64,000 nt of DNA, from contig NC_135259.1 of assembly GCF_964204865.1 (NCBI RefSeq), positions 7,688,001-7,752,000 on the forward strand, given 5' to 3'. Origin of the DNA: Styela clava. Taxonomy: Eukaryota. Position numbers and translations under genes: made by a program. A model generated the notes under the pieces. That model had not been told where the DNA came from, did no database searches, and saw only the letters and a program-made list of their open reading frames with translations. Of the stretch, positions 18,153 through 37,508 are shown one piece after another (the first letter of the stretch is position 1; each line of letters opens with the position of its first letter).

Positions 18153-18413
18153 AACAAGAGAGCTATGCTCAAATATATGGACACGTAGCGCCACCTAAAG
18201 GCAATAATTTTGATGACGTCATAGCAACAACAAAAAAAGTAATAGCCTTCTGAAGAAAATTTTTATCTTTAACCACTGAAAATTTCAAAGCAATTGGTTC
18301 AGTAATCAAAGAGAAAAGCGACTTTTTAAAAACGTGTCAAAGAACAAGAATAAGAACAAGAACAACAACAACATAATATTGAAACGATCGTTATGTCCAT
18401 TTCGTGTCCAATT
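18153..18413 (-). mobile_element. Helentron-associated (HINE/DINE-1-like) non-autonomous element
   Basis: Subterminal inverted repeat GGACACG/CGTGTCC, terminal hairpin GAGC-TAT-GCTC, internal (aagaac/aac)n microsatellite. Second copy at 37509-37748. Confidence 0.65.
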
Positions 18414-18646
18414 ATAGCGTGGTATACCGCGTTGGTGAACACCACTTGACGAGGTACTTGAGGCAGTTCTTGTCAATGCGATCAGGAAAACTGAGACGAA
18501 GTATCATAACCGAAGGTCTGAAAACATTCTGGCACATGTACACTGACATTGAACAGCTTGAATATTCCATCCTGACAGCATGACAGTCAATAGATATAAA
18601 GGTTAATAGCATCTTTAGAGTTGTTAATTTCTGGTGCGCGCTGCTA

Positions 18647-21600
18647 CTAATAAGTGTTTTCCTCAATTGTGTTAAGTATCCAAGGAACGAAATAGAAAAC
18701 ATCCGTATAAAACCCTGGATAGACGACATCGTTGACCTTTGCACCACAGCCGAGTCCCCAACTGACGATGCCAACTTGATACCAACACGTCTCTCCTTCT
18801 TTTGATTTGATCTAAATGTAAAAGATTAGAAAATAAAATTATATATATGAAATGTGAAAACTCAAAAGTCAATTGATTACGTATAAAATGATTTATTGTC
18901 GTTCATTCTTTTAACAGCGTTCAAGGTATAATAATGTTTCTACTTTAATTTATTTTAATCAATTCTTGAACTGAACACTGATGTATTATGTATAAAATCT
19001 AAAGACATCCATTATTTTTTTTTAGCTTTTTCCGAAGTATCAATGACGCTACGTACCTTTCTCACGAGCGGCCCACCACTATCGCCTTGGCACGAATCCA
19101 CTCTTTTCTTAGAATTAATTGCACAAAATATGCCAGGAACAAATTTAGGAGCACCTTTCCACGTGTCTTTCATAACACCCAGCCTGTCTTTGCAACTAAA
19201 TAAAGAAATAAAATTTTTGGCTAGTTATAAATAACAGCAAGACCACATAAAAAATGACAATAAAACTAGTCAATCAAGTTTTAAAAATTGCTGAAAATTC
19301 ATACTATGTAGTATTTTTAATTTCTAAAGCTCCTTGCTGAAGTCTTAATGACGTAATAATTCCTGAGAAATCGTCCGGTGTTCGCTCGGTAGTATGTCCA
19401 AAACCGGTAACTACTGATGGACTGAAATTGTTAAAGTCCGTACCCGATAACTTGTATTTTTCACCTGAAATAGTTAAACGGGAAACGTCTGAGTGTCATG
19501 TAAATAATACTTGCCTAATTAGAATATTTTTAGAAAAAGAAACTACTTTGACATCATGCAATATTATGTAGGCCTACAACTTATTATGGCAACTGTAGCT
19601 TTATTTACATTACACTAAGTATAACGGTTCTACCACCTACTGAATAAAAAAAATAGGCGACACAAAGATGACCCCTATCCAAAAGCTTCGGTCAAGACAA
19701 TCTAACAAAAGTGAGTGACAAAAAAGCAATAAGTGCAACGACCATTTATTTCTACGCTTGGAGTAGATCACGACACACGTCATCACGCCACACACTCTTT
19801 TGCCCCTGACCAGTGACCGGACGGCGCACAATCATGTATAAAACGTACCTCGTTGAATATGAACATATATATATACATGATAGTAAAATGCAGTTCATTT
19901 TATTAAATCAAATCAAGTGTTTTTTATTTTACTTTCTACTTTTTTTTCATTATCTTCGCTGTCAAATTTGTTTTTATATACTTACCTTGTTTATCACAAT
20001 CATCAGAGTCAAACTTAGAGGAAGAAAATCGAGAATCTTTGCAGTTATTTATACACGGTATACATATTGGTCGAATAACCTCATTGAATACTAATACACC
20101 TACTGAATTGATTATGAAATCTTCATTTTTGATAATTAAGTTATATCCCAGCTTTATCTTAAAACAAAAAATGAATACAGTAAAGTACAGTAAGATTCCT
20201 AGCTGAAGTAAATGAGCTCTATTCTTTAGAGTACAATTTTGTAAATCAATAAAATTTAACCGCGATACAATAGACTGGAGACCTTACATCACATATCATC
20301 AAAGGTAGTAAACTTTTTATTTCTGACAAAGAAAATTTGCGTAAAAATCAAGAAAGATTATATGTACTTCCTACACAGCCTTTGTAGTGTACTTACTAAT
20401 GCAATATCGTTTTTCATATTATGTAGTGTAAACTTTTCATGCATTATAATTTTATCCGCATCATAGTATCTTTCAGTTCCAACTTGCTCATCAACTAATC
20501 GAATTTCAGTTATTCCTGAAATTCGACAAAAAATTTCAATGATGTTCGAGAATAAAAAATAGTAATATATAAATAATAATAATATCATTTTTTTTGTTAT
20601 AAAAGGAAATCTAGATTCCAGATATCTCTCTCTAGTACAGTGGTTCCCGAACTTTTTAGAGTTGGGACCCACTATTTATTACCACAGCTTATGACGACCC
20701 ATTTAACTTTTTGTGACATAACAAAGAACACAGCAATGGCTAATCATCGCAAAACTACCGTGTTTCCTCAAAAATAAAAACGAGAATCTGGAAACGAGAC
20801 CTAATTTGAATTTTAAAAATGATTTCAATTAAACCCTACCCTAGAAATAAATTTAAAATGTGTGGCAGAGGAAAGGTTAAATGACCTGAGGTAAGGTGAA
20901 GATTATACCACGATTCAAGATTGTGTGATGTCACAATCACAATTATGACATTTGTCACTTGGTTTTTGTATGGGAAATACGAATAAAAACACGGTATGTC
21001 GGTTTTTATATAATGTTTGTTAAAAAATCTCTTGATTTTCTACAATGTAATTTTATTTTCAATAAATGAACACAAAAAAACCTCTTTCAAAAAAAAACAT
21101 AGTGTTATTCTTCGAAATAAAGTAAATCTAAATCCTGTCTTAATTTCGGGGAAACACGGTAAGAAGTGCTGTACAATGTACAAAACTGCTATGCGTAAAA
21201 AGCCACATGGTCATTCTTTGTGTAGCAAATTTTTGTTCCTTTGAGAAGATCAGGAAAAGGGAACTTTTACAGATTAGAATTTAAATTAAATTTGATTTCT
21301 TTTGTTTTTTTTGAAGTTTTACGTATTCAAGTCGCCACCGATCCTAATAATCGGTATATTTAATCAAAGCTTTTTACATCTCTTCACGACCCACTAAGTT
21401 CCTTTCGCGACCCACCAGTGGGTCGCGACCTATAGTTTGGGAACCGCTGCTCTAGTAACAACCCCCGCTATGAGACTAAAAAAAATTATATACCAAGTGG
21501 TGTTTGAAAGAGAAAAGACAAAATGAAAAAAAAAGATGATAATCATTCGACTTGTCCAAAAACATTATACTGTTTATAAATACTGACTAGATTTTCTACA

Positions 21601-24600
21601 AATCCAATATTGTTCACGGTTTTCACAGCTTTTAATATTAAAATATCGTCTTTGAGATACAATAAATTTGTTCAATAACCTTATCTAATTAAAACATACC
21701 CATTGCAAATATAAAATTCTTTTGCCAATTCTTCTCTCTTCGTTTTGCTGAATCGAAAATATGAGATGCTGTCAGCAGCCAACGATTATTAAGTATGGAC
21801 GCTCCACCTCGAACGTTGTCGAAAGTCTAAAAATAAATATAAAATTCATTAAAATAAAAAAAAAACTCAATATATAGTGGGATGTATACAGATGGACGAT
21901 TCGATATTTTACTTATGCTGATTCTAGTATTTTTCGATATAGACAAACTCTAGAATTTTTTACTACAGATCTTCTTATCTGCTATTTTATATAATTATAC
22001 AATCCAAACATATCGTCATCATTTGTTATATTTGAGTTTTTTCTTTTGTTTGATATTTGAAAATTCGTATGCTGGCGATAAAACAATATGCGTATATTCA
22101 GTATATTTATAATAAATCAAATTTAATCTATTATAACCGTTCCCCCTAACCTGACTGACTGTAGACTTCTTTTTTAGAACAACAACTTGCCATGGCCATG
22201 CACCTTCTATTGCATTTGTTCCTTCAATTACTCTAAGCACTTTAATTTTGTCTATACGATCAACATCACCAGCGATACCACATTTTGTGTAATCAACTGC
22301 AAAGTAATAAAATAGTATTGAAGATAAGTAACAAAATGGCATTCCGTAATAGGATGTTTGTGGTAAATGGAAAGGTGTTAGGGTACGTCACTAATCTTCT
22401 ATCTTATTTTGTATGTTTTTGTAGAACAGATGGATTCAAGATACGGCCCGCGGGCCATTGGCCCGATGGACCCATTTACGTGGTCCGTGAGAGGCTTGCT
22501 ATACCATTATTTTTGATACTGTTTCTTATTTTATTTGTAACGGTACCAACCTTTGGCGTTTTCGGTCTTGTGTTATGTGACTACGTCACACTGGGGTGAA
22601 GATTCGTCCGACAAGGATTCAAGAACGCGTTTTTTTTTCGGTGCAGTGTAGTGATTAAAAAAGTTACGACAGGTATTCCAGTTAGGGATTTGTTCAAAAA
22701 GAATTGTTTTAGAACAATTGTTTTAAATCAAGTTTTTTTGCCTGTTTTGTTCAAAATGGCTGTACTATTTGATTTTTTGTTTTAAATAGGTTGAAGAAAA
22801 ATGAATGTAAAAACTTGCCAAGCGCTTCTTATTTGCAATAAATTTTTCAAAACGCCACAAATACCGACAGAGGCTCATGCACACCTTCTCAAGCTGTAGT
22901 TCAGTGGCTGGCGCAGTAAGACGCAACCGATAACGTAACGCCATTACGTAAACGACCCTGCGACAAAACCACCTTGCGAAATTGAAATGCGATCGAATAA
23001 ATGAGTTTGTTTAATCTTGAAAAACTCTATCACTTCAACCTTAAAAACAAAGCTTGCTAAGCATAAATTAACCGAACAATATTAACCGTAATAATGCCTT
23101 CATATTACGAGAAAAATGTCAATACATGAACTCGAAATCCACATCATGGCGTCATAACAGATTATTTGAGGCGTCATTGCATCAGAGGACTCTAACAATT
23201 AACATAGGCCAGGCTAGGGTGTCTCATCCGCCGTCGATAAAAGCATATTCTTCATGATCGCAACCCACTCGTTTTGCCGAAGGCTGCCATCCCTCTAACT
23301 GATTTTGTAGTAGGCTTGTGAGCAAATTTTCATGATTTTCTTACTCAAAACGTCTCTTTGATATCACGGATAAACATCCCGGTTAAAATCTTATGATTTT
23401 TGTGGAGATACGAAAGTCGCGATAAATGTACGCAATAGAAGTAAAAGTCAAAATAGCAATTTTTACTTACATTTTTAAAATTATAATTCATGCTGCATGT
23501 ACAGCTGCCCAAATGCAACGTTTTGGCGTAGTTTCGCGGCCATGTATTTCAATACAAAATACAGAAAAATTTGATTTAAAACAAGCCCTTATTTTAAAAC
23601 ACGATGTTACTTCTTTATTCAACACAATCACTAAATGGTTTGCCAATGTGGGCGCCACTATTGTACAAAACCAATTTGCTAGTTAGTAGTTACGATACCA
23701 TTGTGGATCAATTAATTGTTGAAGTCCGTATTGTCTTCGGGTAAAAATATTTATCAAAAAATGTCTCTAGAGAAGAAACATTCAGCGAAATACAGAGTTT
23801 AAAACAGTGGCTCGCCGAATGGACGACCTATAAGAAAATCAGAAGTAGAACAAGATAACAAGCAATCGTTGATTCCAAACGAGCCTACTACGGAAACGAT
23901 TAGCATATTTTAAAAGGAGCTATTCATATTATTGGAGTTGCACGAATATGTAAAATTATGCATGAATCGATCTTTACTTTGGCATCACGTATCTCTTTGA
24001 TCAGTTCTTTAATTGAAATACGCCCTGGCAAGCTCAACTTCGAGTTGCTATAAACTTGTTAGTTTTCCGATGACCCGGCCTTTCATAACTAAAGTTTTAC
24101 GCTTTGACCCATAGCGATACGCACGTGCACGCCCCTGTTATAAAACGAAACAGGATATTTCTTACTTGTTTTAGGTTTTGTTGGCAAAGGTGGCGGTGGA
24201 AATGGAGGCGGAATGCTTAATTTTCTGGCATCGTCACATGTCACGTCAACGTAGTCCAGTGACCAAGTAGAAAAAGGTTTGCAAGTGATTGTAGCTACTT
24301 CGTATCCAGAACACGTCAGAACAGCCTGTAGTTTAGATAATAGTTAATTAATAAACAGATTTTCTATATTCTAATAATATGATGAATAAAGTCCATATGC
24401 TCTCATGTATATGTGATGATATTTCTAAAGCTAAAGTTATGATCCTGCCAAATTTTCCTGCCAACAGCAGGAAGCAGATACTTGGGCGCGATTCCATATT
24501 TAAAATAATGGAGGCAACTAGAACAAACGCTTTCTTAGCGATGGAAAATCAAAGCAGCATATAGAAGTACCTCATCTCCTGTCGAAAATTGGATAAAAGC

Positions 24601-27600
24601 AACGTCGTCTTTATGACCTTGCAGTTGAACGCCAGTTTTAAGTAAATAGGTATCTAGTACGCAACCTCTGTCTGGAACAAAAATATATGAAAATATTATT
24701 ACGAAATAAAATTATATCGTAAATACTTTTTTATTTTCAATACCCAAATATCCCATTGCGAATGTAGTATGAAAACAAGTAAAAAATTTTAACGCATCTA
24801 AATTTTTGATTTACGAATAAAATTGATCCCGGGATTGTTTGAAACCATAAACTTTTCGACGGATTTTAAATTTTCTTAAATGTATATATCAGTCAAACAT
24901 AGGATTCTTCCTAATGCATCTGCTAAAATTTTAATTGAATAATGCGAAAGCGAAAAGTTTTCCTCTACTATAGCTAATTCAGAAAAGTTTAAATTTAATG
25001 TTTTTTTTTTTCTGTACTTTATTTTTTATTCATGCTGATAATAAGTGCTGAAATTCATAAATTTGAGGTCATTGATTTATTGTTATCACAAAGTAAAATG
25101 TGGATTTATAAATTTTTCTTTAAGAAGAACGCTAACCTTTGCATGTTGGTGGCGGCCCTGACCATTGACCAGTAGCTCCGCACCAAATAGTTCGGAATCC
25201 TAATATTTTGAAGCCTATTTGACAGGAAAACCTTGCGTATGTGCTTGCTGAACTGTATTCAACTGTGAGATATTTGGATAGATTGATGAGTTCCGGACAT
25301 CCTGAAAATAAATAAGCATTGACGTGGTAAATTCTTTTTTGTGCCAAAAAAATAGGATTTTTTCTTCCACGTAATAAAATTCGAATATATATTGAAAATC
25401 TTACGAATATCTTTGAGTTTTTTCAAGTTTCATATCGATCGAACACTCGAAGAATGTTTTTTGTGAACAATCGAAATTTTTGCCATATATCAAATATATG
25501 CATATATTTTATTATCATGAGTGCGCGTTGTTTTTAGTTGTAACTTATTCATGCTTGCAAGATAAATTCCTGGAGAATGATTTTTTCCAGTTTTGTATTT
25601 CAACACAAGCTTTCCACCTTATCCCGAATGTCACTGATGTAGCTTAGCTATTCCGCACCTTGAAGTTTACCAGAGTTGGATGCGTATAAGTCAATACAAA
25701 AATGTAAACATTTCATAAATGAATATATTATGCTGTTGACCATATTGTATTTAATATTCAGAAGAATATTTTACAAATCTTGTGTTAGAATTCGATGTGA
25801 TAATTACCACATGTTGGTGTGGGATTGTCCCATACGTTCATCCCAACGCATTTCAGTGTCTTCGATCCGTGCATATGCAAGGCTTGCCTTTTGCATCTGA
25901 ATGTTATTGTGGATCTTATTGCATAAATATTGTCACCTTGGAGACTGCTTTCTATAACTTGGACACTCTTTGAATAAGGTGGCAGATTACAAAATTGCTC
26001 TGTTAAAACAAAAGTTATACTCAATATATATATACAGGGTGTCTCAAAATTAAGTATACACTTTTAATTTTCAGAGCGTTCATTTATTCGGAAAACATAA
26101 GTAGTCGAATTTAGTTATTGTTTGAATTTTTACTGACCCACAGAATGACAATGAGTTTAACCCAACAAATGTGATGCAAAAAGCATAAAAATCAATAAAA
26201 ACTCAACACTTCCTTAACAGAGAATTTGTAATTAATTCGGCTCTGAATGCTTCCCTCGGACCGTCCGCTGCTTGGTTTTCCTGATTTTTGTGCATCAACT
26301 ACAGATCGAGTTTCCATAAATTTACGATGAATTGCCCAAAAATTTTCGTCGTGTAGTAACCGAATTAATAACAAATTCTCTGTTAAATTGGCGCTCAGTT
26401 TTCTTACTGATTTATATGCTTTTTGCCAAACAGCAATTTAGCACCTCATTTGTTGGCTTAATCTCCTTGTCATTCTATGGGTTGGTAAAAAAATGCAAAT
26501 ATTACCTAAATTTTACTACTTATACATACTATGTTTTCTAAAGAAATGAACGCTCTACGATGAGTACCTGAAAAGAAAATCAAAATTGAAAGTGTATACT
26601 TACTTTTGAGACACCCAGTATAGTCCTTCGAAGGAAATAAGCAAATGTGTATATAGCAAAAGTAATTCAAATACAGCATATAAACGTCCCGACAAAGAAC
26701 TTGCATTGAAGATAGTTATACAAGATGACCCCAATTAAAACCATTACGTTTTTATGCACTTTATTTGAATTAACTTGTACATTCGCCAGTAACCCTGGCG
26801 AATGTACAAGGTAATTCAAATGCCCCCTGCGCGGTCAAAAACGGTACAATACTTCACAATACCCAATATCTGGTAGGTCCTACTGAGGTAATATAGTAAC
26901 ATACCTAAACATTTCGGCAACTGATCAGACCATTCACCGTTATCCTGACAATTCAGCTCAGATGCTCCTTGCAATTGGAAACCGGTTTTACAAAATATAA
27001 CAATGAAAGTTCCATCTCGATACTGACGCATGTTGGATCCTTCCGGCGCTGTTAATGGTTTGCATTTAGTTCTGCTAGGTCCTGTTGAAAATAGAAGAGA
27101 ATAAAAATTTTGTGATAATGTTGCTTCATGGGATGTTATCATCAATGCCTCGTGGGTTAAACATCATTTCTGAAGTACATGAGTAGTCGTTTGAAATTCA
27201 GCTAGCGTTTATTTGAGCAAACTAAGCGAACCGTAAAATGCCAGAGATTTCAGAAACGAATGCAAAGGCCAGTACCTGATCTAGACACAAGATGGATGCG
27301 TCTTTATTATATATAATTTATGTAAAGTGTAACTGAAAGATCTATAGCGGTTCTCAAACCGTAGGGCGCGCCTCACAATAGGAGCGTAGACAACTTTTGA
27401 GGGCTCTCCAGAAGTATGTGCATCAAGATGGCGGACACCGGAACGTAGTATGAGTACCAGGTTGGGATTAGGCCATAATTTTATTCCAATTTTCTCCTAT
27501 TTGAGTTTTATTACGAGTTTGGGGACTAGCCAAGTGACTCTTGTAGTATTTGTGCCTGAAATTTTATCCTAATTCTAACCAGGTACACATACTACGTTCT

Positions 27601-30600
27601 GGTGTCCGCCATCTTGGTTTGCATAGTTCCGGAGTAACTCTTTGAGGGAGTGAAGCTAATTAAAAATAAGACTATTTGTTAGATTTGAACTTTCCCGATT
27701 TATTTTGGTTTCAAATCTTTTTATTTTTTTTTTCATTATTTACACTTCATCCACATATTTTCAACGTGTTTTTCAAATTAAACAATTTCGCCTTACTATT
27801 TGTTATTTGTAGCTTATTGTTAGGGTTAGCTAGTTGTAGCTAGTTCTCTTTGAGGTGGGGTGCAAGACTTGACAAATTCTAAAAAGGGTGCGCGGCTTAA
27901 AAAGTTTAAGAACTTTCCATGATGCTTTGGCACAGGGGCGGGCAACTTCTCTAGTCGGCGGGCCAGATGTGAAAAAATAAAGCCCTCGGCGGGCAGGATT
28001 ATTACAAAATTATTATTATTGCCCACCCCTGCGGGCAGCATAAATAAAATCATACGAATAAAACAAAAATTGTCTACATCAATGAATACCTGCAAATATT
28101 CGTGAACTGTCCGTGGTAGACGTGAGAGTAGTAGTAACTGTAGAAAGAGTAGTTGGTATAGCAGTGGTAGAGCGACATTGTACCTTACTGTAATCTACTG
28201 ACCACCTTCCGTCATCGCGACATCTTATGGACCTCACTATCCGATCATAACATTTCAGATTTATCTTATAAAACAAAATTATTGAAAGAATTAATGTTTA
28301 AATAATAGTTTATTCCAAATTTAGTCTATACAGCATTTTTGATAGAACACGGTTACATTTTCGTATTTTTCTCTAAAAGCTATCCATTAGAGAATAAATT
28401 TAATTAATAAATTTATATTCTCGCCTCCAAAGAAAAGTGATAGCAGACATTGATAGTATATAAGGCTATGTATGAAGCGCAGAAAGTTGAAAGAAATTCT
28501 CCTCTAGCCGCTTGTAGCGGTGTCTCGAAAATGTCGTGTCCCACATGTCTCACTTGTTTCACATTGCCCTGGTACAAGTGAAATACGTGGGACAAGTGAG
28601 GCACGTGGAGCAGGTGGGACAAATGGCAGAATGTCCCAAAAGGTTTTTTATCAACATCTGAAGAAATACCGGATATGTGTCTAAATGTATATTTTGAGTT
28701 TATTATTACTATTATCTTCATAATAGAACATAAATTTAACATTGCTATTATCAACATTTGCTTTTCTGAAAATAATAACTTATACATATCAGTACTTTTC
28801 CTCCTTTCTTTTTGATAATCTTTTCTTTCTTGTCGTCGTAGTTTTCAACAGTGACTCGGTTATTCAAATAGAATTGATCAAGTATGCATTTCCTCTCTGA
28901 AATATAATGCAATTTTTAATAGTTCGCATTGCTGTAAACAAGGTACGCAGCAGCCACTTTGAGGCAGAGGGTTGAAAAAGTTGGACTGACTGTAATCTCT
29001 CTGATTAGGCATATATAATCTCGTTTGTGTTGGGTTAGAGTTCATGACATGGGCAAACTACGGTCTGCCCTCACATGACCCGCCAATCTAGGTGCCAAAT
29101 TTTTGTCCCGTGGTTCAAAAACCTTGCCAACCCCTGGGTTAGACGCTAGTCTAACAATGATTTAATTAAAATAGGTATTTCTAAAGTGCAATGCCAATAA
29201 AATAACATCATTTCATTACCATCGCGCTCATTGGTGAATAAAACTATTGGTTGTTTCTTACCTGGGCGTGAACGGCACGAAGGAACATCGGCTGACCATT
29301 TCTGAGCTTCGTTGCAAAATATTTGTTTCTCACCCATTAGAATATATTTTTCTTCGCAGTTAAAAGTAACTGTGGAATTTATTAAACGAAGTCTGTCTGA
29401 CCGCGAGTATGAGGCAACAAGATTGGAGGGTAGTGTAAGTTCCGGACATTGTATTGCTGTGAATTAATGAAAATTAAAATAGAATATGGAGTTGATAAAT
29501 TTTTTGAGACTTCCGGAGGTTAGGCTACATGACTGTTTTTAAGGATCAAATCCAGATATGATCCGTGCTTTCTACAATCATTACATACACACCGGCTGTG
29601 GAATTTTATCTCATAATAGTGCAATACGTTGGGTGTCTCAAAAATGTCATGTCCCCGCGTGTCCCACTCGTCCCCCATGTTTGTCCTAATTGTCCAACGT
29701 GTATCGCTTGAACAACCATTTTTTCATGTCTGTTCCAAACAATCCAGATGATAATTAAATATTATATATCAGTATCGGAATACCGAAAATTCGGTATTTT
29801 CAAATATCGGCGTCTCGATATCGGATCATCGAATTGAAAAATATTTTTTTATAAATAATAATTGCAATACTTTAATTCAATCAGGTGTAGTTCACTTATA
29901 CGCCAATTTTCACCACCTTGAAACAAGTAGGGTACGTTTGGAAAGTGAGACACGTTGGACACGTGGGACAAGACATGTTCAAGACACCGCAATACGCCAT
30001 CACATAGATAAACAGCTGAATGAAGAAAAACCAATTTTTTTGTCTGAATTAAAAATATGACCAGAACCATAATATATAAGGCTTTTGACCAAAAGCTAGA
30101 ACAAATGTAAAATCTAAAATACAATCAGGAATATGGAGAATAAACATAGCATACCTTCGCATGTAGGCGCACTGGTAGACCAGACGTCACCTTCTTCACA
30201 TTTCAATATTCTACTCCCAATAAGTCGATATCCAGATTTACAGAAGAAAGTTGCAAATTTGTTGTTCGAAACAGTCATTTCGGAATTTGGATTTGCTGTC
30301 AATCTGGGACAATTTGCAACTGGAAAAAGGTAACTTGCGTAATACATTGAATGCATCGAAGATGGAAGTTTTTTTAAAATATTGTGTATATGTTATAATT
30401 ATTAATTATATATTTTATTACCTCTTTGGCAAACGATATTCAGTTTTGACCAAACGCCGTTTTCCTGACAGAACGCATAATCTTCCTTCACTACATTTTT
30501 GTATCCTGTAATGATAAATAAATTCGTACCGTTTGACAATGCAATTGAATTTTGGCATATAATCTCCCTATTCTGAATCATTGTCTTCTTTATATTGGTC

Positions 30601-33600
30601 ACTACGTGAGTTGATTTGTTTTTCGATACACGTGATTTCGATGTAGAAAAGGGGTTTTGTGAATGTAAGAATTATCCTTAATTGCCAATCCAAAAGTTTA
30701 TCAGTGAATGTTTTAAAAATAGTTATAATAATATGTCTTGATAGTCCTTCAACAAAATGATAAAAACATTTTACATACCGCTAAATTAAAAATATTGCCT
30801 GGTGCTAAAACGAGTTTATACGAACATTGTGAAGTGGAACGATTTTCGATAATGAGCAATGAATTCAATAAAATTGATAAATAAATTCAATAAACTTCCT
30901 CAGACCTTCTGCACACTTATAATGAGCTTGCAGTATTCCGCTTTTAGACGTGTCGATCGTTGGTGAATCTGCAGATATTGATTTATCGGAAGATTTTGGA
31001 GGTGTTCCACATTTATTTTCCAAACAACTATGCCGAGGTGTAGACCAAGTGTAATCTTCATTGCACTTAATTTTTGAATCTCCGAGAAGAATGTAACCTT
31101 TGTATAAAATAATTACATACTGTATCATTAATATTTGTAACCAGTATATATCAAAAATATAATATAATGTAATATAATTTATAATACATATAATTATAAA
31201 AGTTGAAAAAGTAAAATACTACACGTAATTATAGTAGGATTGAATATCCATCCTTTTTGAAAACTCGGTTTTGATTGTTGTAAATACAGAGGACGAATAC
31301 AGAATACTACCGACCATATTCACAAACGTGGTGAACGACATCTCGGACATCATATCCTAGTTTTAGTGATATTGCAAGTGAGTGATGGATGATGTTCGTC
31401 GGGGGCTTACATCCACCTTAAAAATGAGATTATTTGTTGATATTACGCATGTAACATAAAATGGTATTATAAAATAAAACTATATGAAAAACATTCCTAC
31501 AAATTGGATCTAAACAATTGGCGAGAATATAATATGCTAGAAAGCAATCCTCACATATATGGACATAAAAATGGCGAAACGGTACGGGTATGGTAAATCT
31601 TCTTATCTGAACACTGATTTTACCGCACAGATCGTCGGCGAAACGTGACGGAGGAAGACAATCGTGACGTAATTTTATGTGTTTCCATCCCCAAATAAGT
31701 ATCCTTTTTAATTGAAATAAAACTTCGAAAATTTCAGGTGAGACATTTGAAAATGAAATACTCACGAATGCACGTTGGTTCAATGCCAGACCACTTTCTA
31801 TCAGTTCTGCATTTCTGGAATATGTCACCGTAAATATAATAACCTTCCTTGCAATCGTACTGTAATTTTTGTCGTCTATCTCCATAATATTTAGCAATTT
31901 TTGGATAATAGACTGAGGGAAGATAACAATCTGCATCTGTCAATAGGAGGATAAAACTGCATATAGGCACAAGACTGCTGTTGGCTCATTGCGGATCCAG
32001 TATAGGAATAAATGAAACTTTTTGAAAAATAATGTAGAATCGATTTCCCCCTTACTCGTCTATATATATATATTATTGTTTGATTTGTCGGTAGTTTAAT
32101 CGTTATCAGCTACAACGACTTACTGTATTTAGGTAAAGGGTAATCCTGAAGTATTCGCACCACGATGTCGCACAACCTGAATCCTAACCTGTTACACGAC
32201 CTGAGTTCAGGTGGTGCGCCATCTTGGTACGCATACTTCAGGAGGTCCAATTAAAGTTTATTTCTTTTAATACAAAAAAAGTAAGAATATCAAAAATATC
32301 AATCGCGGAAAGGTAATAGCTGCAAATTAATATTGGAAAGAATATAAATTACTTTAGCTCAAAGTTTATCAAATTATAAATTACTTGGATTGAAGCAAGA
32401 TCGACCACAGTGGTCATCACAAAGACATTCTTTCGATTTCGCCTTGCAGTCCCATTTCGACGAGCATGGTTTCCTACACTTTCGTCCTGCTTCAACTAAA
32501 TGAATGTTTTTGGTACATTTCTCGTCACCTGTCGCAAAAGGAGATAATGTTTATTCTATAAAATTAGGTGCAAATACGTAAAAAATATGGAGCAAAAGCG
32601 TGGGAACAATTTCAGTAAATCATTTCACAATGTAGTCAGATTGATAATATAATTTCTTCTCACTTGGTATAGCACATGTATTATGGAGGTGAAGCAAACG
32701 TACTTAAACTAATACTGTATGTCAAATTCTGTATTTTATATTGTAAAGAACTTTACTCAATCATTAAAATTATAGGCAACAGTTTATTGATTCAAATACG
32801 GGGAACTAAAGTGAACATAATAGCTGTGACTATAAATTCTGCATATCCGTAAGCTGTTTTATTCGTTAAATTTCTATTTATTTATTTGGGAAATTTGGGA
32901 AAAATCTGAAATGTTGTTGGATAAATCTTAAACTACGTTCGAAACAAATGAAGTGCTGTAAATGTCACTGAGTTTATTTTCGTTTCGAAGCAGTAAACTG
33001 AACAAGGCCCAAGGCGTTAGGGACTTTCTGACATAAAGTATACATCTGCTATAAATAGAAAACTCAAATGACGATTTCTATTGGGGCATCATAGGAAAAT
33101 TGCTCGTTTGCATTGGTTGGATAAACGTTTTCAGTAATTAGGAAAAAGGAATACCTATGTTTTCAACGATCTTCATAGCTTGCCGACATTCTGCCATTGT
33201 TTCGCAACATTGTGTTGAACAAGCAGTTAAGTCCACGTCGTAAAATCCAGATGCTACGAGGGCGACAATATTTTCGCAAGAAACTGAATTGCACTGCGCT
33301 TTTGGAATACATGAAGCTGCTATAAGACGTTCACCTAAAACAAAAACAATATGAAAAAATGATTACAATATTATCTTAGGTGTAAAGTATTCAGGTATTG
33401 TGTTCTGTAATTCAAATTCAAATAAGTAATACATTTCCAAAGTTACCCGAACAGGTTTGAAAAAATATTCATCACTTTTATAATATACAGCGTTTTCACA
33501 TATATTTTAAAGAGAACAGATCATATTTCAAATACTGATATAATTAATTCGAATTTACGTCTACCAGATGATTGCCCCTATATCTTATTGTAAAAATGTC

Positions 33601-36098
33601 CACTGAAATTATGCATAGTATTCCTTTGATTCTTTTTCATTACGTGTGGCAAAAAGCTCCATTGCGAAATTCTTTCGTAAAGCATATAGCTGCATTTAGA
33701 AAATAAATTGTTGATATCTGTTACAAACGTTGCTAATATTTATTTTAAAGGAATCTCAAATATTATTTTGTTTCAAATCAAAGTTTTATTATTTTTTACT
33801 TTTTCATATTTTTTCACATTGACATATATTTTTTTTAACTTGAATATTTTAAATACGATTACACATTGAATATTCAGTGTAACATGTGCAATAATACTTT
33901 AACATTCACATATGTTTAGAATCTGTATAACGTCGGAATTTCGTTGTATCTAACTAAAAAAAATTAGGCAAAGGCCAAAATATTCAAACAGACGTTTAAT
34001 ATGAAAATAAGTCGTCCGAAGAATGACAATTTCCACTACAGGGTATAATAAGGTCAACTCGAAAATAAATGAAACAAGGAATAATTTCTAAGATGCAGTA
34101 CTTTTATTAGGCTGATCTATTTTGAAATAACAATTTCATCTGATATCAGATGCATAATATTAATGATAATTCTTAGAAAACACCTCATTTACCTCCTGAT
34201 TGCAGTTTGAAATCTTTCATAACAAGACAGCTTTCATCTTTTGAACATTTGACTTCAATTAGGTCATGATCTTCATAGTCAATAATAGAATTGTAAATAT
34301 GAATTCCACGAGGGCAGGAGGCCAGACCTATTTTGGGTAAAAAAAAAATCTTTTACCTAAATGAACTGAAATTGAAATTGCGGATTATGTTTCAAATTCA
34401 CAGATTATAACTATGAGGCTGTAAGACAAGTCGATGACGTAGAATCGTGCACAGATTGTGTGAAAGTGATCCAACTGATTACTCTCATTAAGATATGTTT
34501 TCTGCATTGTTCCAAACTGTTCTCATGTTTCGAAGGAAATTTATAAACTATTTTTTTCTACAATTATATATTCTCAGTGTTCTGATATAACATTTATACT
34601 ACAGCAAGCTTTTGGTAAGGAATTGTGTATAATCGCCACAACAAAGCGCAAATCAGGATCAAAAACTTAGCTGCCATGGTGCCTTTTTTGTGTGTGTGAT
34701 CAGTATGTAGGCGTCATCATTGAGACAACTCGACATAGCGATTTTTCATAAAAATGTTGTATTAAATAGAATTAATAAATAAAAATCAAGAAAATATAAG
34801 TTATTTCCTACTTTGTGAAGTTACATCACTGATGGATCTCGAGCTTTTTCTTGCTTTTTGATATCGAAGTTCAAATGTGGATAAAGGATTGATAACGAAA
34901 GCTATCAAACGTATCTTGTTTGTTTTGGTTTCGTATGTTACTTCAAACTCCTCATTGTGAAACACTTTTTCCAAAGATCCATCTGTTAGCTGATATAATT
35001 GACGATAGAAATAAGGTGCATTATGTTGTGCCAGAACTTGGTTCAAATGTTGATAATCTCCGTGTTTGAGAAAACCGAAACTTCTCCAGTTCGACACACG
35101 TAAAGACTATTATAAGTTTTATTGATTTGAAAATGAACTTTAAAGATCTGAAGCATGAAATCTCTTCCACCAGGCTATCGCGTCTACAAACGTTAATCAA
35201 ATAATAAAAGTTTAAACTGATAGGATTTGTTACTTAATTTTTCTGAAATGTTACATTTAATCTAAAAGTCACTAAATTACACAATTTTTGCAATATAAAA
35301 TGTGGAATAATAAATAAGTGTTTTTACGTTAAAAATTTTCAATACGCATTTGCAACTGACACAGTTGATGAAACAAAACGATTTCATTCCAAGTAGCTTC
35401 ACATACCTCAAACTAGCAGGTTGATCTTTGCTTAGAATAAATAAAACAAAAACAAAAAAACAGCCGCTTAACAATTCTGTCATGAAAATTGTTTTCTTAC
35501 CCATAACGTATCTGGTCCTGAAAATTTTATGAATGGAAAGAATAAGTTGATAGTTGTGCCTGGATCAGTTTCCAAGTGCCACGTACATGTTAAGCTTTCT
35601 CTATCTCGTCTCGACCATGTCTTCAGTGATATAGTCTTAGCACCGGCGCTCACTTGCTCATTGAACTTACATTCATCTACAACAATAAAAGAATACTCAC
35701 TCCATGAGCGGAATTATAGAATATGAACCCAAGTTTTGGGGGTATAATTTTTAGTAAAATCACAATTATACCAATAGCATTTAAAGAATGCTTAATTTTC
35801 AGGAGGATCTAAAGGAATTGCTTTGTCGACGTTGTCTGACAAATTATTAGATGATTTAGTAACTTAGTTTATATTATTTGAATTTTACTAGTTTAGACAA
35901 AGTAAAGGCTCCTAGAATAATAATCTTTCATCCTATAAAATTTGGCGAATTTGAAAAAAAATTGATAAAATAAACCTAAGATTCATGAACGAATAAGTCT
36001 ACTATTAATATATAAAAAAAAAACATACCTTCTCCGTTTATCTTCAACGTATTCACAAAAAGTAGACATCCAGTAAAAATCAAATTAATGCAATTCAT
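18647..36098 (-). CDS. Secreted mosaic trypsin-like serine protease: SP - CUB-like - LU/three-finger-like - WAP - 10xCCP (sushi) - Pro-rich linker - S1 protease; ~1335 aa, 26 exons
   Basis: Exons: 36098-36029, 35676-35501, 35106-34812, 34327-34193, 33334-33155, 32528-32385, 31936-31766, 31416-31315, 31097-30906, 30505-30422, 30319-30155, 29456-29262, 28896-28796, 28264-28090, 27081-26905, 25999-25808, 25301-25137, 24671-24571, 24325-24166, 22296-22151, 21826-21700, 20515-20397, 20157-19986, 19464-19305, 19195-19057, 18811-18647 (4008 nt, all GT-AG, phase-consistent, no internal stop). Activation site R|VIEG; triad TASH / NDIAL / GDSGG; Asp189 (VDSC). Confidence 0.88.
20638..21449. mobile_element. 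hAT MITE in a protease intron
   Basis: CAGTGGTTCCCGAAC...GTTTGGGAACCGCTG with perfect 8-bp TSD CTCTAGTA. Confidence 0.92.
20758..21159. mobile_element. Tc1/mariner-pogo-type MITE nested in the hAT MITE
   Basis: TA|CCGTGTTTCC...GGAAACACGG|TA termini with TA TSD. Confidence 0.75.
22427..24137. mobile_element. Old non-autonomous hAT-like element filling a protease intron
   Basis: CAGATGG...cggcccgcgggcc left end, ...GCACGCCCCTG right end, degenerate TSD ttgtagaa/ttataaaa. Confidence 0.5.
26035..26618 (-). mobile_element. Internally deleted Tc1/mariner element with an N-terminal transposase remnant
   Basis: TIR CAGGGTGTCTCAAAA..AAGTATACACTTT / AAAGTGTATACTT..TTTTGAGACACCCAG with TA TSD. Remnant [19 protein letters not shown] resembles the KF.ETGSV.D..RSGRP HTH region. 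Confidence 0.85.
26764..26820. repeat. Near-perfect 57-nt palindrome/hairpin in a protease intron
   Basis: 26-bp arms TTTGAATTAaCTTGTACATTCGCCAG / CTGGCGAATGTACAAGgTAATTCAAA, one mismatch, 5-nt loop. Confidence 0.9.
27402..27638. mobile_element. Long-TIR MITE (Merlin-like, GG termini), nested in a hAT-like element (~27345-27915)
   Basis: TIR gaagtatgtg..caagatggcggacaccggaacgtagtatg and its reverse complement. Same family at 43364-43600; shorter relatives at ~32139-32248 and ~53899-54007. Confidence 0.75.
29632..29990. mobile_element. MITE with internal 9-bp (gtgggacaa-like) repeats
   Basis: Inverted termini ggtgtctcaaaaatgtcatgtcc / gggacaagacatgttcaagacacc. Related copy at ~28518-28640. 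Confidence 0.55.
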
Positions 36099-37508
36099 CT
36101 TTTCTTTAAAAAAAGTACTGATGTGAAATAAATATTACCGACAAATAAATTTTATTCAGATGGCATGGCGGAAAAATCAGGCATAAAAGTTTGATGTTGT
36201 ATTACAGTAATCAAATTATCCAACGGAAAATATGTTCAATTCATTCTACTGCAGATATTTACTTCCCTATTTTCACTCAGAAGATAAATTTTTTGTCCAT
36301 TTAGTTATTTTTCAAGTGACAATTTACCAAACGTAACCAAATGTTTCACGAACAACGTACCTAAATATTACATATTCACTAGAGTCAAAATCGAATAAAA
36401 ATATTCAGCTTAAAATATCATCGTAATCTTTTAACTGGTTCCGTAACGTTCAATTTCGTATTGTGAGTTATATTTTGCAATTCAATTATAATTCAACCAC
36501 AAAACCGATATGTATTGTTAATTCCATTTTGATTACTTAATTTGAAATATAGATATATAAGTCACATATTTCTTTGCATGATACTAAAATTATACTATCA
36601 TATAAAAAGTTAAAGCAATAACATTTCAGGGAAAATGCAAGTCGACAATATTGCTTAACAAAATATAAAAAAATGTATAGAACTTTGTATTAGTACCAGA
36701 ATCGCATGTAACCTCGAAAGATTCGTATACTCCATAATTGCTGAAAATAGTATTAGACACTTTTCTGTCTGCAAGAATGATATCTTATTATTTTACTCTA
36801 CCTGATAATATCTTTGAATAATATCGAATATTTTAGACACAGTAAAAATCAAAACACTCAATCTGCATGGACATAACAACTGTAAGAATTATTAGCATTA
36901 AGTAAGTAGCCAAGCCTTACTTGTAAAATTAAAAACGCATGCTTGAGGCAATTTACGATTTATCGCCATTAAAATGCAAAACAAATATACTGAAATGTTA
37001 CAGTAAATCTTATGTAATTAACTTACTTTGCACAATGAATCGTATGTTGGCTAAATAGGCAAGTCTTCAAATGAATCTAAAACACCTATACCGTAAACGT
37101 GAATAAGCTCTGGAATAAGCCATTATCTGTACGGTATGTTTACAAGGTATAGTTGATTTTTCAAATATTTCTGACAGCATGTCTTCGAAACTATGACTTT
37201 GGTTTTGTTGTCATACGTGATAGCCAAACTAGAACATGAGTCACGCGACAGTGTTAGTAAAGATCGTATATTAAATCAAATATGTGTGTTTCTTTATATG
37301 ACTCTACAGTAAAATTATGAGGATATTTTTGCTTCATGTGTAGAATGATTGCAGGTGGTCTATCAACAAGTCAAATAATAACTACCTGTTATAGAGAAAT
37401 ATATATTTATATTTACCCGGTGAGCGAGAAAATCTGATAATTGTTCTTAAAAAATAGCAAAGTATAAAATGTCGATTGAAAAGTGAAAAAAAAAATGTTA
37501 CATCCATA

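What the first reader, a model, noticed from the sequence alone, without database searches (positions are those of the whole stretch)
18647..36098. Mosaic complement-like protease with an unrecognised CUB-LU-WAP-CCP10-trypsin architecture
Seen: a 26-exon phase-consistent ORF with a signal peptide ([15 protein letters not shown]), a divergent CUB ([17 protein letters not shown]...TFELRY), a 9-Cys three-finger/LU-like module (C.RG...C..DESC...SC....C....C...C.TQCC.....C), a LEV-9-type WAP ([11 protein letters not shown]...[14 protein letters not shown]), ten CCPs and an intact trypsin domain. Known: MASP/C1r/s are CUB-EGF-CUB-CCP2-SP; factor B/C2 are CCP-vWA-SP; nematode LEV-9 is WAP-CCPn without a protease. 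None combines these modules, and no vWA or EGF exon was found here. Inference: a lineage-specific recognition-plus-protease molecule of innate immunity, allorecognition or fertilisation, possibly carrying its own inhibitor-type (WAP) module.
Basis: partly seen in the sequence, partly recalled or inferred. Interest (0 to 1): 0.8.

Follow-up and report, generated by a model that had tools for sequence, protein, structure and literature searches.

The report
Sea-squirt mosaic WAP-sushi serine protease
This is a real, expressed sea-squirt (Styela clava) gene for a secreted trypsin-like enzyme on a long stalk of sushi repeats; it belongs to a sea-squirt family related to complement factor B, and only its first two modules have no detectable relatives.

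Summary
A 26-exon minus-strand gene (36098-18647, 1296 codons) has GT..AG at all 25 introns. Spliced contigs from 4 runs in 2 studies join the signal, CUB-like, Cys-rich and WAP exons to the sushi exons. The exon peptides match RefSeq XP_039260971.2, "uncharacterized protein LOC120337291 [Styela clava]", at 1277 of 1277 residues.

- **Confirmed modules:** ten sushi modules, a WAP module, and an intact zymogen-type trypsin domain with no vWA or EGF.
- **Not unprecedented:** WAP followed by sushi and then this protease type recurs in ascidians. The genome has 32 paralogous WAP exons, and relatives exist in Clavelina and Phallusia.
- **Protease placement:** it falls inside an ascidian clade that holds the vWA-bearing factor-B-like proteins, and lies far from MASP/C1r-like proteins.
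- **Orphan modules:** the CUB-like and Ly6/uPAR-like modules are unique to this gene. Their fold assignments remain weak.

This scan had already found the same family on other DNA of this genome (s1-815922, s1-825817, s1-816022). Function is untested. Verdict: a new variant of a known kind, of moderate interest.

The parts
36029..36098 (-). Exon 1: start codon and hydrophobic signal-peptide-like N-terminus (residues 1-23)
   Evidence: Spliced to exon 2 in 4 of 4 runs. Contigs end 7-17 nt upstream of the ATG. The signal peptide is judged by eye and by a hydrophobicity window only.
35501..35676 (-). Exon 2: first half of the CUB-like module (C26...C54-x-W, INLFF)
   Evidence: Pfam CUB E 0.01, 16.6 bits, profile positions 5-47 of 110, below the cutoff. 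Only itself in its own genome. Joints.
34812..34989 (-). Exon 3: second half of the CUB-like module plus a Ser/Lys-rich linker
   Evidence: No CUB hit. Only itself in its own genome. Phase-0 intron to exon 2. Joints.
34193..34327 (-). Exon 4: first part of the 10-Cys module (3 Cys)
   Evidence: No Pfam hit. Only itself in its own genome. Joints.
33155..33334 (-). Exon 5: second part of the 10-Cys module (7 Cys, C-x3-CC-x5-C end)
   Evidence: No Pfam hit. The only true hit in 1.84 billion representatives is its own protein. Weak paralog at L002, 31% identity over 36 aa with 5 Cys aligned. The AF2 model of this exon was unreliable, pLDDT 56.
32385..32528 (-). Exon 6: WAP-type four-disulfide module (8 Cys, CxCDD..CG.SCFNP)
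   Evidence: 32 paralogous exons in its own genome. 9 of 21 aligned family exons hit Pfam WAP at E<=0.01. 43-60% identity to Pfam-called WAPs of relatives. AF2 pLDDT 85.8; best structural rows are half-SLPI at Z 2.6 and nawaprin at Z 2.2.
31766..31936 (-). Exon 7: sushi/CCP 1
   Evidence: Pfam Sushi 7.2e-7; Cys/Trp pattern; joints.
31315..31416 (-). Exon 8: first half of CCP 2
   Evidence: joints.
30906..31097 (-). Exon 9: second half of CCP 2 and first half of CCP 3
   Evidence: Pfam Sushi 0.003; joints.
30422..30505 (-). Exon 10: second half of CCP 3
   Evidence: Pfam Sushi 0.2; joints.
30155..30319 (-). Exon 11: CCP 4
   Evidence: Pfam Sushi 2.4e-6. The acceptor at 30319 is seen in spliced contigs.
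29262..29456 (-). Exon 12: CCP 5
   Evidence: Pfam Sushi 5.7e-7.
28796..28896 (-). Exon 13: first half of divergent CCP 6
   Evidence: Matches P0011 599-631.
28090..28264 (-). Exon 14: second half of CCP 6 plus a Thr-rich linker
26905..27081 (-). Exon 15: CCP 7
   Evidence: Pfam Sushi 2.8e-9.
25808..25999 (-). Exon 16: CCP 8
   Evidence: Pfam Sushi 8.7e-5.
25137..25301 (-). Exon 17: CCP 9
   Evidence: Pfam Sushi 5.9e-7.
24571..24671 (-). Exon 18: first half of divergent CCP 10
   Evidence: Built like exon 13: 101 nt, phase 1 to phase 0.
24166..24325 (-). Exon 19: second half of CCP 10 plus a Pro-rich linker
   Evidence: Residues 734-931 repeat 462-661, 29.5% identity over 210 aa, E 2.4e-18.
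22151..22296 (-). Exon 20: linker Cys960 ([10 protein letters not shown]), activation site R976|V977 (KVLR|VIEG), WPWQ
21700..21826 (-). Exon 21: catalytic His1025 (TASH); no His-loop cysteines
   Evidence: Pfam Trypsin 0.004.
20397..20515 (-). Exon 22: catalytic Asp1082 (NDIAL)
   Evidence: Pfam Trypsin 0.018.
19986..20157 (-). Exon 23: ascidian-clade insert after DIALIKLG, PICIPC and extra Cys
   Evidence: The exon choice is settled by P0001/P0011. The insert is shared by 9 of 9 ascidian relatives aligned.
19305..19464 (-). Exon 24: middle of the protease domain (VTGFGHT)
19057..19195 (-). Exon 25: S1 Asp1229 and catalytic Ser1235 (GDSGGP; Ser codon AGT)
   Evidence: Pfam Trypsin 1.2e-5; codon context.
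18647..18811 (-). Exon 26: C-terminal end of the protease domain and stop codon
   Evidence: Pfam Trypsin 3.7e-5.

Best explanation
The locus is one expressed Styela clava gene, RefSeq LOC120337291. It encodes a 1296-residue secreted mosaic serine protease with this order of parts: signal peptide, CUB-like module, 10-Cys (Ly6/uPAR-like) module, WAP module, ten sushi/CCP modules in two blocks each ended by a low-complexity linker, and a trypsin domain.

The protease is a diverged paralog in an ascidian-specific family. That family's protease domains cluster with ascidian factor-B-like proteins, and its members carry a WAP-sushi cassette in front of the protease. Here the vWA domain is absent. 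The sushi array was lengthened by an internal duplication of about three modules. Two orphan modules were added at the N-terminus, most simply by phase-1 exon shuffling.

Inferred mechanism. The protein is secreted as a single-chain zymogen and its non-catalytic stalk binds a target or partner. Cleavage after Arg976 (KVLR|VIEG) frees Val977 and switches the enzyme on. The stalk then stays attached through Cys960 to the Cys122-equivalent (Cys1117). The enzyme cuts after Arg or Lys, because Asp1229 sits at the base of the S1 pocket.

Shown here: gene structure, transcription and splicing of the 5' part, domain content, family placement, and intact catalytic and activation residues. Inferred: secretion, the disulfide link, activation, specificity, and any biological role.
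For: Gene and transcript. The 26-exon frame has GT..AG at 25 of 25 introns. Ten of 10 joints in 30300-36150 appear in spliced contigs of 4 runs from 2 studies. Single contigs of 2748 and 2898 nt carry exon 1 through the sushi exons. The exon peptides match XP_039260971.2 at 1277 of 1277 residues.

Domains. Pfam finds Sushi (8 stretches) and Trypsin, and no vWA or EGF even at E<=10. The Cys/Trp pattern gives ten CCPs.

WAP. 32 paralogous exons, 26 of the 33 matches on contig C5. 9 of 21 aligned exons hit Pfam WAP. The module is 43-60% identical to Pfam-called WAPs in P0016, P0035, P0057 and P0017.

Family placement. The best protease matches are S. clava paralogs at 38% identity, followed by ascidian proteins with WAP, vWA, Sushi and Trypsin. 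In a tree of 52 protease domains the query sits in an 18-row all-ascidian set with SH-aLRT 98. A hemichordate factor-B-like protein lies just outside, and fish MASP/C1r-like proteins are distant. Shared derived traits are the DYxxCGxAGD linker, loss of both His-loop cysteines, a roughly 20-residue insert after DIALIKLG, and CxPC with extra Cys.

Catalytic and activation residues are intact: H1025, D1082, S1235, D1229 and R976|V977.

Internal duplication: residues 462-661 against 734-931, E 2.4e-18. All module borders are phase 1.
Against: - No experiment or tissue label supports any role; the runs' samples are coded.
- The splice links downstream of 30319 (CCP4 through the protease) were not seen directly. 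They rest on the RefSeq model and on one 3223-nt contig whose length (2538 nt beyond 30905) nearly equals the 2543 nt predicted.
- The query protease branch is long (1.06) and its place inside the ascidian set is unresolved. The tree was a quick search and held no vertebrate factor B, C2, MASP, C1r or C1s.
- Single protease exons score best against thrombin, kallikrein and TMPRSS in the PDB, which does not discriminate.
- The CUB call is weak. A home-made CUB profile gives 1.9 bits and Pfam lists no CUB for the whole protein.
- The LU call has no database support.
- The signal peptide was not scored by a dedicated predictor.
Confidence: 0.75

Rival explanations
1. It is a working complement component: a C3-activating or convertase-like protease of the ascidian alternative or lectin pathway. 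Its sushi array would bind C3b-like fragments and its head would replace vWA or lectin-binding modules.
For: The protease domain clusters with ascidian factor-B-like proteins. The sushi array scores best against CR1, CR2 and factor H in the PDB. Passages read in a review say ascidians express C3, Bf, MASPs and lectins in hemocytes (PMC5465252).
Against: There is no vWA domain, which factor B uses to bind C3b (that role is recalled). The activation site is an ordinary zymogen site. There are no expression or binding data. The family has many paralogs with very different stalks, so most are unlikely to be core complement parts.
Confidence: 0.2
2. It is a reproductive or self/non-self protease, for example a sperm or egg-coat enzyme or an allorecognition effector, and its orphan head is evolving fast.
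For: The head modules have no detectable relatives. The two public alleles differ at 18 of 1295 residues, and 5 of those lie in a 23-residue protease loop at 1205-1227. Acrosin is the best single PDB protease hit for the whole protein.
Against: No tissue data. Two alleles are far too few for a test of selection. S. clava is solitary. The acrosin score (76.7 bits) is tied with thrombin (76.5 bits).
Confidence: 0.1
3. It is mainly a LEV-9/Hasp-like extracellular scaffold (WAP plus a sushi array) that organises receptors or matrix, and the protease only processes it or a partner.
For: WAP followed by 8 to 17 sushi modules is the LEV-9 and Hasp layout, and both proteins are proteolytically processed (passages read in PMC9083331).
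Against: LEV-9 and Hasp have no protease domain. Sequence kinship of this WAP to theirs was not tested here. The protease has every catalytic residue.
Confidence: 0.08
4. The 5' exons (33155-36098) belong to a separate gene, or the model is an assembly chimera.
For: None found.
Against: Single spliced contigs in X1 and X2 run from exon 1 into the sushi exons. The joints recur in 4 runs from 2 studies. RefSeq predicts the same 1296-residue product.
Confidence: 0.02

Closest known systems
Ascidian factor-B-type proteases with a WAP-sushi cassette (predicted proteins only: S. clava P0014, P0017, P0022, P0026, P0029; Clavelina P0016, P0035; Phallusia 'CiBf-3' P0057)
   Same: The WAP subtype is the same (45-60% identical). 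A sushi module follows it directly. The protease clade is the same, with the DYxxCGxAGD linker, no His-loop cysteines, the insert after DIALIKLG and extra cysteines.
   Different: This gene has ten sushi modules between the WAP and the protease, where the S. clava relatives P0014, P0026 and P0029 have one. It has no vWA, TSP1 or LDLa. It carries two N-terminal modules found in no other family member. It lies on contig C13, away from the C5 arrays.
Complement factor B / C2
   Same: Sushi modules lie upstream of a related protease domain. The ascidian vWA-bearing factor-B-like proteins are in the same protease clade.
   Different: There is no vWA domain. There is a canonical R|VIEG zymogen site and Asp at the 189-equivalent position. 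That vertebrate factor B lacks such a cleavage and has no Asp189 is recalled, not tested.
MASP / C1r / C1s
   Same: A mosaic protease with a CUB-like module, sushi modules and a protease domain. The His-loop cysteines are absent and the catalytic Ser uses an AGY codon. That these two traits mark MASP-2, C1r and C1s is recalled.
   Different: No EGF, at most one weak CUB, ten sushi modules rather than two, and a protease domain split by six introns. It is far from the fish MASP/C1r-like domains in the tree.
LEV-9 (C. elegans) and Hasp (Drosophila)
   Same: One WAP followed by a long sushi array in a secreted protein (passages of PMC9083331).
   Different: Those proteins have no protease, CUB-like or LU-like module. 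Sequence kinship was not tested here.
Horseshoe-crab factor C
   Same: A recognition-plus-protease design with sushi modules before a trypsin domain (recalled). NCBI names the paralog P0029 'clotting factor C-like'.
   Different: Pfam finds no EGF, LCCL or C-type lectin module. No factor C sequence was compared.

Membership tests
S1 (chymotrypsin-fold) serine protease, active zymogen type | Trypsin domain with the His/Asp/Ser triad | tested here: met
   Pfam Trypsin at 978-1287, E 2e-30. H1025, D1082 and S1235 sit in TASH, NDIAL and GDSGG.
S1 (chymotrypsin-fold) serine protease, active zymogen type | Activation cleavage site Arg|(I/V)xGG, plus a linker Cys to hold the chains together | tested here: met
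   KVLR976|V977IEG and Cys960 align with the same sites in relatives. Actual cleavage was not tested.
Ascidian factor-B-type protease clade | Protease domain groups with ascidian factor-B-like proteins and shares their inserts and cysteine changes | tested here: met
   18-row ascidian set, SH-aLRT 98, in a quick tree of 52 rows. Shared linker motif, no His-loop Cys, insert after DIALIKLG and CxPC in 9 of 9 aligned ascidian relatives.
Ascidian factor-B-type protease clade | WAP module directly followed by a sushi module upstream of the protease | tested here: met
   WAP at 251-291, then CCP1 at 298. The same order holds in P0014, P0016, P0026 and P0057.
Complement factor B / C2 | vWA domain between the sushi modules and the protease | tested here: not met
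   No VWA family is listed for P0011 at E<=10, while VWA is found in P0016, P0017 and P0035 by the same tool.
MASP / C1r / C1s | CUB-EGF-CUB-CCP-CCP-protease architecture | tested here: not met
   No EGF, at most one sub-threshold CUB half, and ten CCPs.
MASP / C1r / C1s | Protease domain in the MASP/C1r/C1s clade | tested here: not met
   Fish CUB-EGF-CUB-Sushi-Trypsin proteins lie on the far side of the 98% branch. No named MASP, C1r or C1s was in the tree.
WAP four-disulfide core | Eight cysteines in WAP spacing and a profile match | tested here: met
   8 Cys. Its own Pfam score is 13.1 bits, below the 20.8 cutoff. However, 9 of 21 family exons hit WAP, and it is 43-45% identical to the WAPs of P0016 (37.4 bits) and P0035 (26 bits). 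Structural support is weak: half-SLPI Z 2.6, rmsd 4.1, 35 aligned. Foldseek gave nothing at E<=0.001.
CUB domain | Profile match over the roughly 110-residue beta-sandwich | tested here: inconclusive
   Only profile positions 5-47 match, E 0.01, 16.6 bits, below the 21.4 cutoff. There is no hit for exon 3 or the whole protein. A home-made profile gives 1.9 bits. The fold was not predicted because joined exons were left out.
Ly6/uPAR (three-finger) domain | About 10 Cys with a C-terminal CC-x4-CN, plus a profile or fold match | tested here: inconclusive
   10 Cys ending C-x3-CC-x5-C with no Asn. No Pfam hit. 31% identity over 36 aa to an exon at L002 that ends CC-x4-CN. A 3-sequence profile finds nothing in the PDB at E<=10. 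The AF2 model of exon 5 alone was unreliable.
LEV-9 / Hasp | Secreted WAP plus sushi array without a protease | tested here: not met
   The WAP plus ten sushi modules are present, but a trypsin domain follows. Sequence orthology was not tested.

The most novel reading that the evidence does not exclude
The two orphan N-terminal modules form a Styela-specific recognition head, with a CUB-derived sandwich and a CD59-like three-finger module. On a factor-B-derived protease this head would make a self-contained sensor-protease comparable to horseshoe-crab factor C. That would be a new initiating arm of ascidian complement, or a self/non-self recognition enzyme.
Probability: 0.1. Interest if true: 0.7.

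Novelty: new variant of a known kind. Interest (0 to 1): 0.4.

Why it matters
Tunicates are the closest living relatives of vertebrates (abstract of PMC5465252). How their complement proteases diversified bears on how the vertebrate system was assembled.

This gene shows a factor-B-type protease domain that has kept its WAP-sushi cassette, lost vWA, multiplied its sushi modules and gained two modules without detectable relatives. All module borders are phase 1, as expected for exon shuffling.

The gene gives a concrete, expressed construct for two tests: what the ascidian WAP-sushi cassette does, and whether the orphan head binds anything. On its own it is one more predicted member of a large unstudied family.

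Tried and rejected
Approaches that led nowhere or were set aside:
- **Single protease exons against the PDB.** Best hits were thrombin, kallikrein and TMPRSS at 23-33 bits, too short to place the subfamily.
- **Whole protein against the PDB.** The list was dominated by the sushi proteins CR1, CR2 and factor H.
- **Exon 5 against 1.84 billion representatives.** Nine of the 10 hits are not relatives. By Pfam, six are RCC1-repeat proteins, one is an M4 peptidase with PKD/CUB, and two have nothing relevant. I took them as chance matches and did not check them further.
- **Word search with residues 24-300.** It returned only the protein itself among 931 candidates.
- **Word search with residues 246-300.** It drew a single candidate, so that blank says nothing.
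- **ESM Atlas.** Closed, no result.
- **Home-made CUB profile from 58 CUB domains of 15 fetched proteins.** It scored 1.9 bits on P0011, so it gives no support.
- **LU detour.** The L002 exons have no Pfam hit. The L002 exon finds only itself in the genome. Profile A1 finds nothing in the PDB. The AF2 model of exon 5 with A1 had pLDDT 56, so I discarded it and did not search with it.
- **Foldseek of the WAP model.** Nothing at E<=0.001.
- **Rfam on 18000-37000.** Nothing.
- **Papers.** Seven searches found no paper on a WAP-sushi-protease family in ascidians or on LOC120337291. For the papers listed I saw search listings only. The exceptions are passages of PMC9835746, PMC9083331 and PMC5465252. 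Supplements were not opened. Ji et al. 2000 and Yoshizaki et al. 2005 on ascidian factor B were seen only as reference-list entries and may describe domains relevant here.

Not done:
- My own exon peptides were never joined for a search or a fold. The CUB-like (exons 2+3) and 10-Cys (exons 4+5) modules therefore could not be folded as whole domains.
Full report
**What is there**

I set exon borders from splice signals and frame. The result is 26 exons, 3891 nt, 1296 codons plus a stop. All 25 introns are GT..AG. Eighteen are phase 1, six are phase 0 and one is phase 2, and no junction codon is a stop. Every module border is phase 1. Phase-0 introns split the CUB-like module and the two divergent sushi modules (CCP6 and CCP10) internally.

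**Transcription and splicing**

I laid contigs from four runs in two studies on 30300-36150. The tool labels these runs RNA only as a guess.
- All ten predicted joints in that stretch are present. Nine appear in 4 of 4 runs and one in 3 of 4.
- Each skipped part is CT..AC on the + strand, which is GT..AG on the gene's strand. That is what spliced RNA shows and genomic DNA does not.
- Single contigs of 2748 nt (X1) and 2898 nt (X2) run from exon 1 through the CUB-like, Cys-rich and WAP exons into the sushi exons.
- A 3223-nt contig in X3 starts in exon 5 and continues 2538 nt beyond position 30905. The model predicts 2543 nt to the stop.

**Identity**

A full HMMER search with the exon-5 peptide against 1.84 billion representatives gave one true hit, P0001, 1295 aa, 100% identical over residues 188-246. 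Its cluster holds XP_039260971.1/.2, named "uncharacterized protein LOC120337291 [Styela clava]". The 1296-residue version, P0011, equals my 26 exon peptides at 1277 of 1277 residues, each at the expected place. That also settles the one doubtful border, exons 22/23 (NDIAL|IKLGYN). The gene is therefore already predicted in RefSeq, and the organism is the ascidian Styela clava. P0001 is another allele with 18 differences. The RNA contigs carry its variants at 31345 and 31023.

Every full-length search used the public protein by its id.

**Domains**

- **Sushi and trypsin.** Pfam on the whole protein lists only Sushi (8 stretches, E 1e-48) and Trypsin (978-1287, E 2e-30). It lists no vWA, EGF, CUB, WAP or LU family, even at E<=10.
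- **Ten sushi modules.** A Cys/Trp pattern finds them at 298-350, 354-410, 415-475, 481-531, 536-593, 601-661, 696-747, 752-812, 814-866 and 871-931. The pattern also gave one false match, and its match for the first module begins inside the WAP.
- **Internal duplication.** Residues 734-931 repeat 462-661, 29.5% identity over 210 aa, E 2.4e-18. Each copy ends in a split divergent sushi module followed by a Thr-rich or Pro-rich linker. An internal duplication of about three modules therefore lengthened the array.
- **WAP module (exon 6, 8 Cys).** It is sub-threshold in Pfam on its own, 13.1 bits.
  - It has 32 paralogous exons in this genome; 26 of the 33 matches lie on contig C5.
  - Nine of 21 aligned family exons hit Pfam WAP at E<=0.01.
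  - It is 43-60% identical to modules that Pfam calls WAP in relatives.
  - An AlphaFold model built on that alignment is confident, pLDDT 85.8.
  - Foldseek finds nothing at E<=0.001.
  - The all-against-all aligner ranks half-SLPI first (Z 2.6, rmsd 4.1, 35 aligned) and nawaprin fourth (Z 2.2). Only 6 of 48,161 chains reach Z>=2. This support is weak but points the right way. That both proteins are WAPs is recalled.
- **CUB-like module.** The only support is a half-domain Pfam hit, E 0.01, below the cutoff, among about 27 segments scanned. A home-made CUB profile gives 1.9 bits.
- **Cys-rich module.** It has 10 Cys and no Pfam or PDB-profile support. Its one weak relative is an exon at L002 on contig C5 that ends in a Ly6/uPAR-style CC-x4-CN. 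The two share 31% identity over 36 aa with five Cys aligned.
- **No other relatives of the head.** Exons 2, 3 and 4 match nothing else in the genome at E<=1. Residues 24-300 find no other protein in the word search.

**The protease and its family**

- **Best matches.** The closest matches to residues 955-1295 are S. clava paralogs P0014 and P0015, 38% identity, Sushi plus Trypsin. Next come ascidian proteins that carry WAP, vWA, Sushi and Trypsin (Clavelina P0016 and P0035, the latter named C3/C5 convertase). After them are S. clava factor-B-like proteins (P0024, P0027), TSP1-bearing paralogs, a "clotting factor C-like" paralog (P0029) and Phallusia "CiBf-3".
- **Tree.** In a quick maximum-likelihood tree of 52 protease domains, the query falls in an 18-row all-ascidian set supported at SH-aLRT 98. 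A hemichordate factor-B-like protein is the first branch outside. Fish CUB-EGF-CUB-Sushi-Trypsin proteins are far away.
- **Caveats on the tree.** The query branch is long and its position inside the set is unresolved. No vertebrate factor B, C2, MASP, C1r or C1s was included. I dropped the P0015 isoform rows before building the tree.
- **Shared derived traits.** The alignment shows a DYxxCGxAGD linker, loss of both His-loop cysteines, a roughly 20-residue insert after DIALIKLG, and CxPC with extra cysteines. These occur in 9 of 9 ascidian relatives aligned.
- **Catalytic features.** The domain keeps a canonical activation site (KVLR976|V977IEG), the triad (H1025, D1082, S1235) and Asp1229 at the S1 base. 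The Ser codon is AGT. Six introns split the domain.

**How it probably works**

This section is inference. The protein looks like a secreted single-chain zymogen whose stalk binds a partner. Cleavage after Arg976 would activate it. The stalk would stay disulfide-linked through Cys960, and the enzyme would cut after Arg or Lys. Whether it acts in complement, reproduction, matrix or elsewhere is open. The sample labels of the RNA runs are coded, and no paper mentions the gene.

**Comparison and novelty**

- It is not factor B, because it has no vWA.
- It is not MASP, C1r or C1s, because it has no EGF, has ten sushi modules, and sits in a different protease clade.
- LEV-9 and Hasp share the WAP-plus-sushi layout but have no protease (passages of PMC9083331).
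- The new features are the two orphan head modules, the ten-module array and the loss of vWA.
- Earlier notes of this scan describe the same family on other DNA of this genome. They report a TSP1-stalk paralog, WAP modules in factor B, and a WAP between two sushi modules. My results agree with them.
- Seven paper searches found no description of the family. Two older papers on ascidian factor B were seen only as citations.

**Verdict**

This is a new variant of a known kind, of moderate interest.

Noticed in passing
window 32135-32260 (intron between exons 6 and 7): A repeat of about 115-125 bp that matches itself on both strands (palindromic, MITE-like). The first look found 2137 candidate copies in the genome. 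It explains the contig depth in the thousands and the many loose ends at 32189-32268 in the RNA-type runs.
   Followed up: partly
window 35432-35482 (intron 2): The tool skipped a repeat at 35432-35467. In all four runs one contig ends at 35482 and continues for 255 letters unlike the window. This is either another copy of a repeat or an alternative transcript form. Not resolved.
   Followed up: no
window 19100-19170 (exon 25; residues 1205-1227): Five of the 18 amino-acid differences between the two public alleles (P0001, P0011) fall in a 23-residue protease loop just before the S1 Asp. Four of the five change charge.
   Followed up: no
L002 = G000:C5:23863993-23867157: A separate locus with exons that end CCSEDLCN and CCEQNLCNE, and one that begins LQCYS. 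These are Ly6/uPAR-style motifs (recalled). It is the only weak relative of exon 5, Pfam does not recognise it, and it finds only itself in the genome.
   Followed up: partly
G000 contig C5, about 10.2-10.4, 11.7-11.8, 13.07, 14.1-14.2, 18.80-18.85 and 20.19-20.46 Mb: Tandem arrays of the same WAP-type exon; 26 of the 33 genome matches lie here. These are presumably the main clusters of the WAP-sushi-protease and factor-B-like family. The gene studied here sits apart on C13.
   Followed up: partly
P0014 / P0015 (S. clava paralogs, 1480 and 1455 aa): The closest paralogs carry one family-type protease domain after WAP-sushi, followed by three more trypsin domains of a different, long-branched kind. 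They are polyprotease-like models.
   Followed up: no
window 6330-6953, minus strand: A 207-aa open frame with hydrophobic ends, the longest ORF in the window. It was not examined.
   Followed up: no
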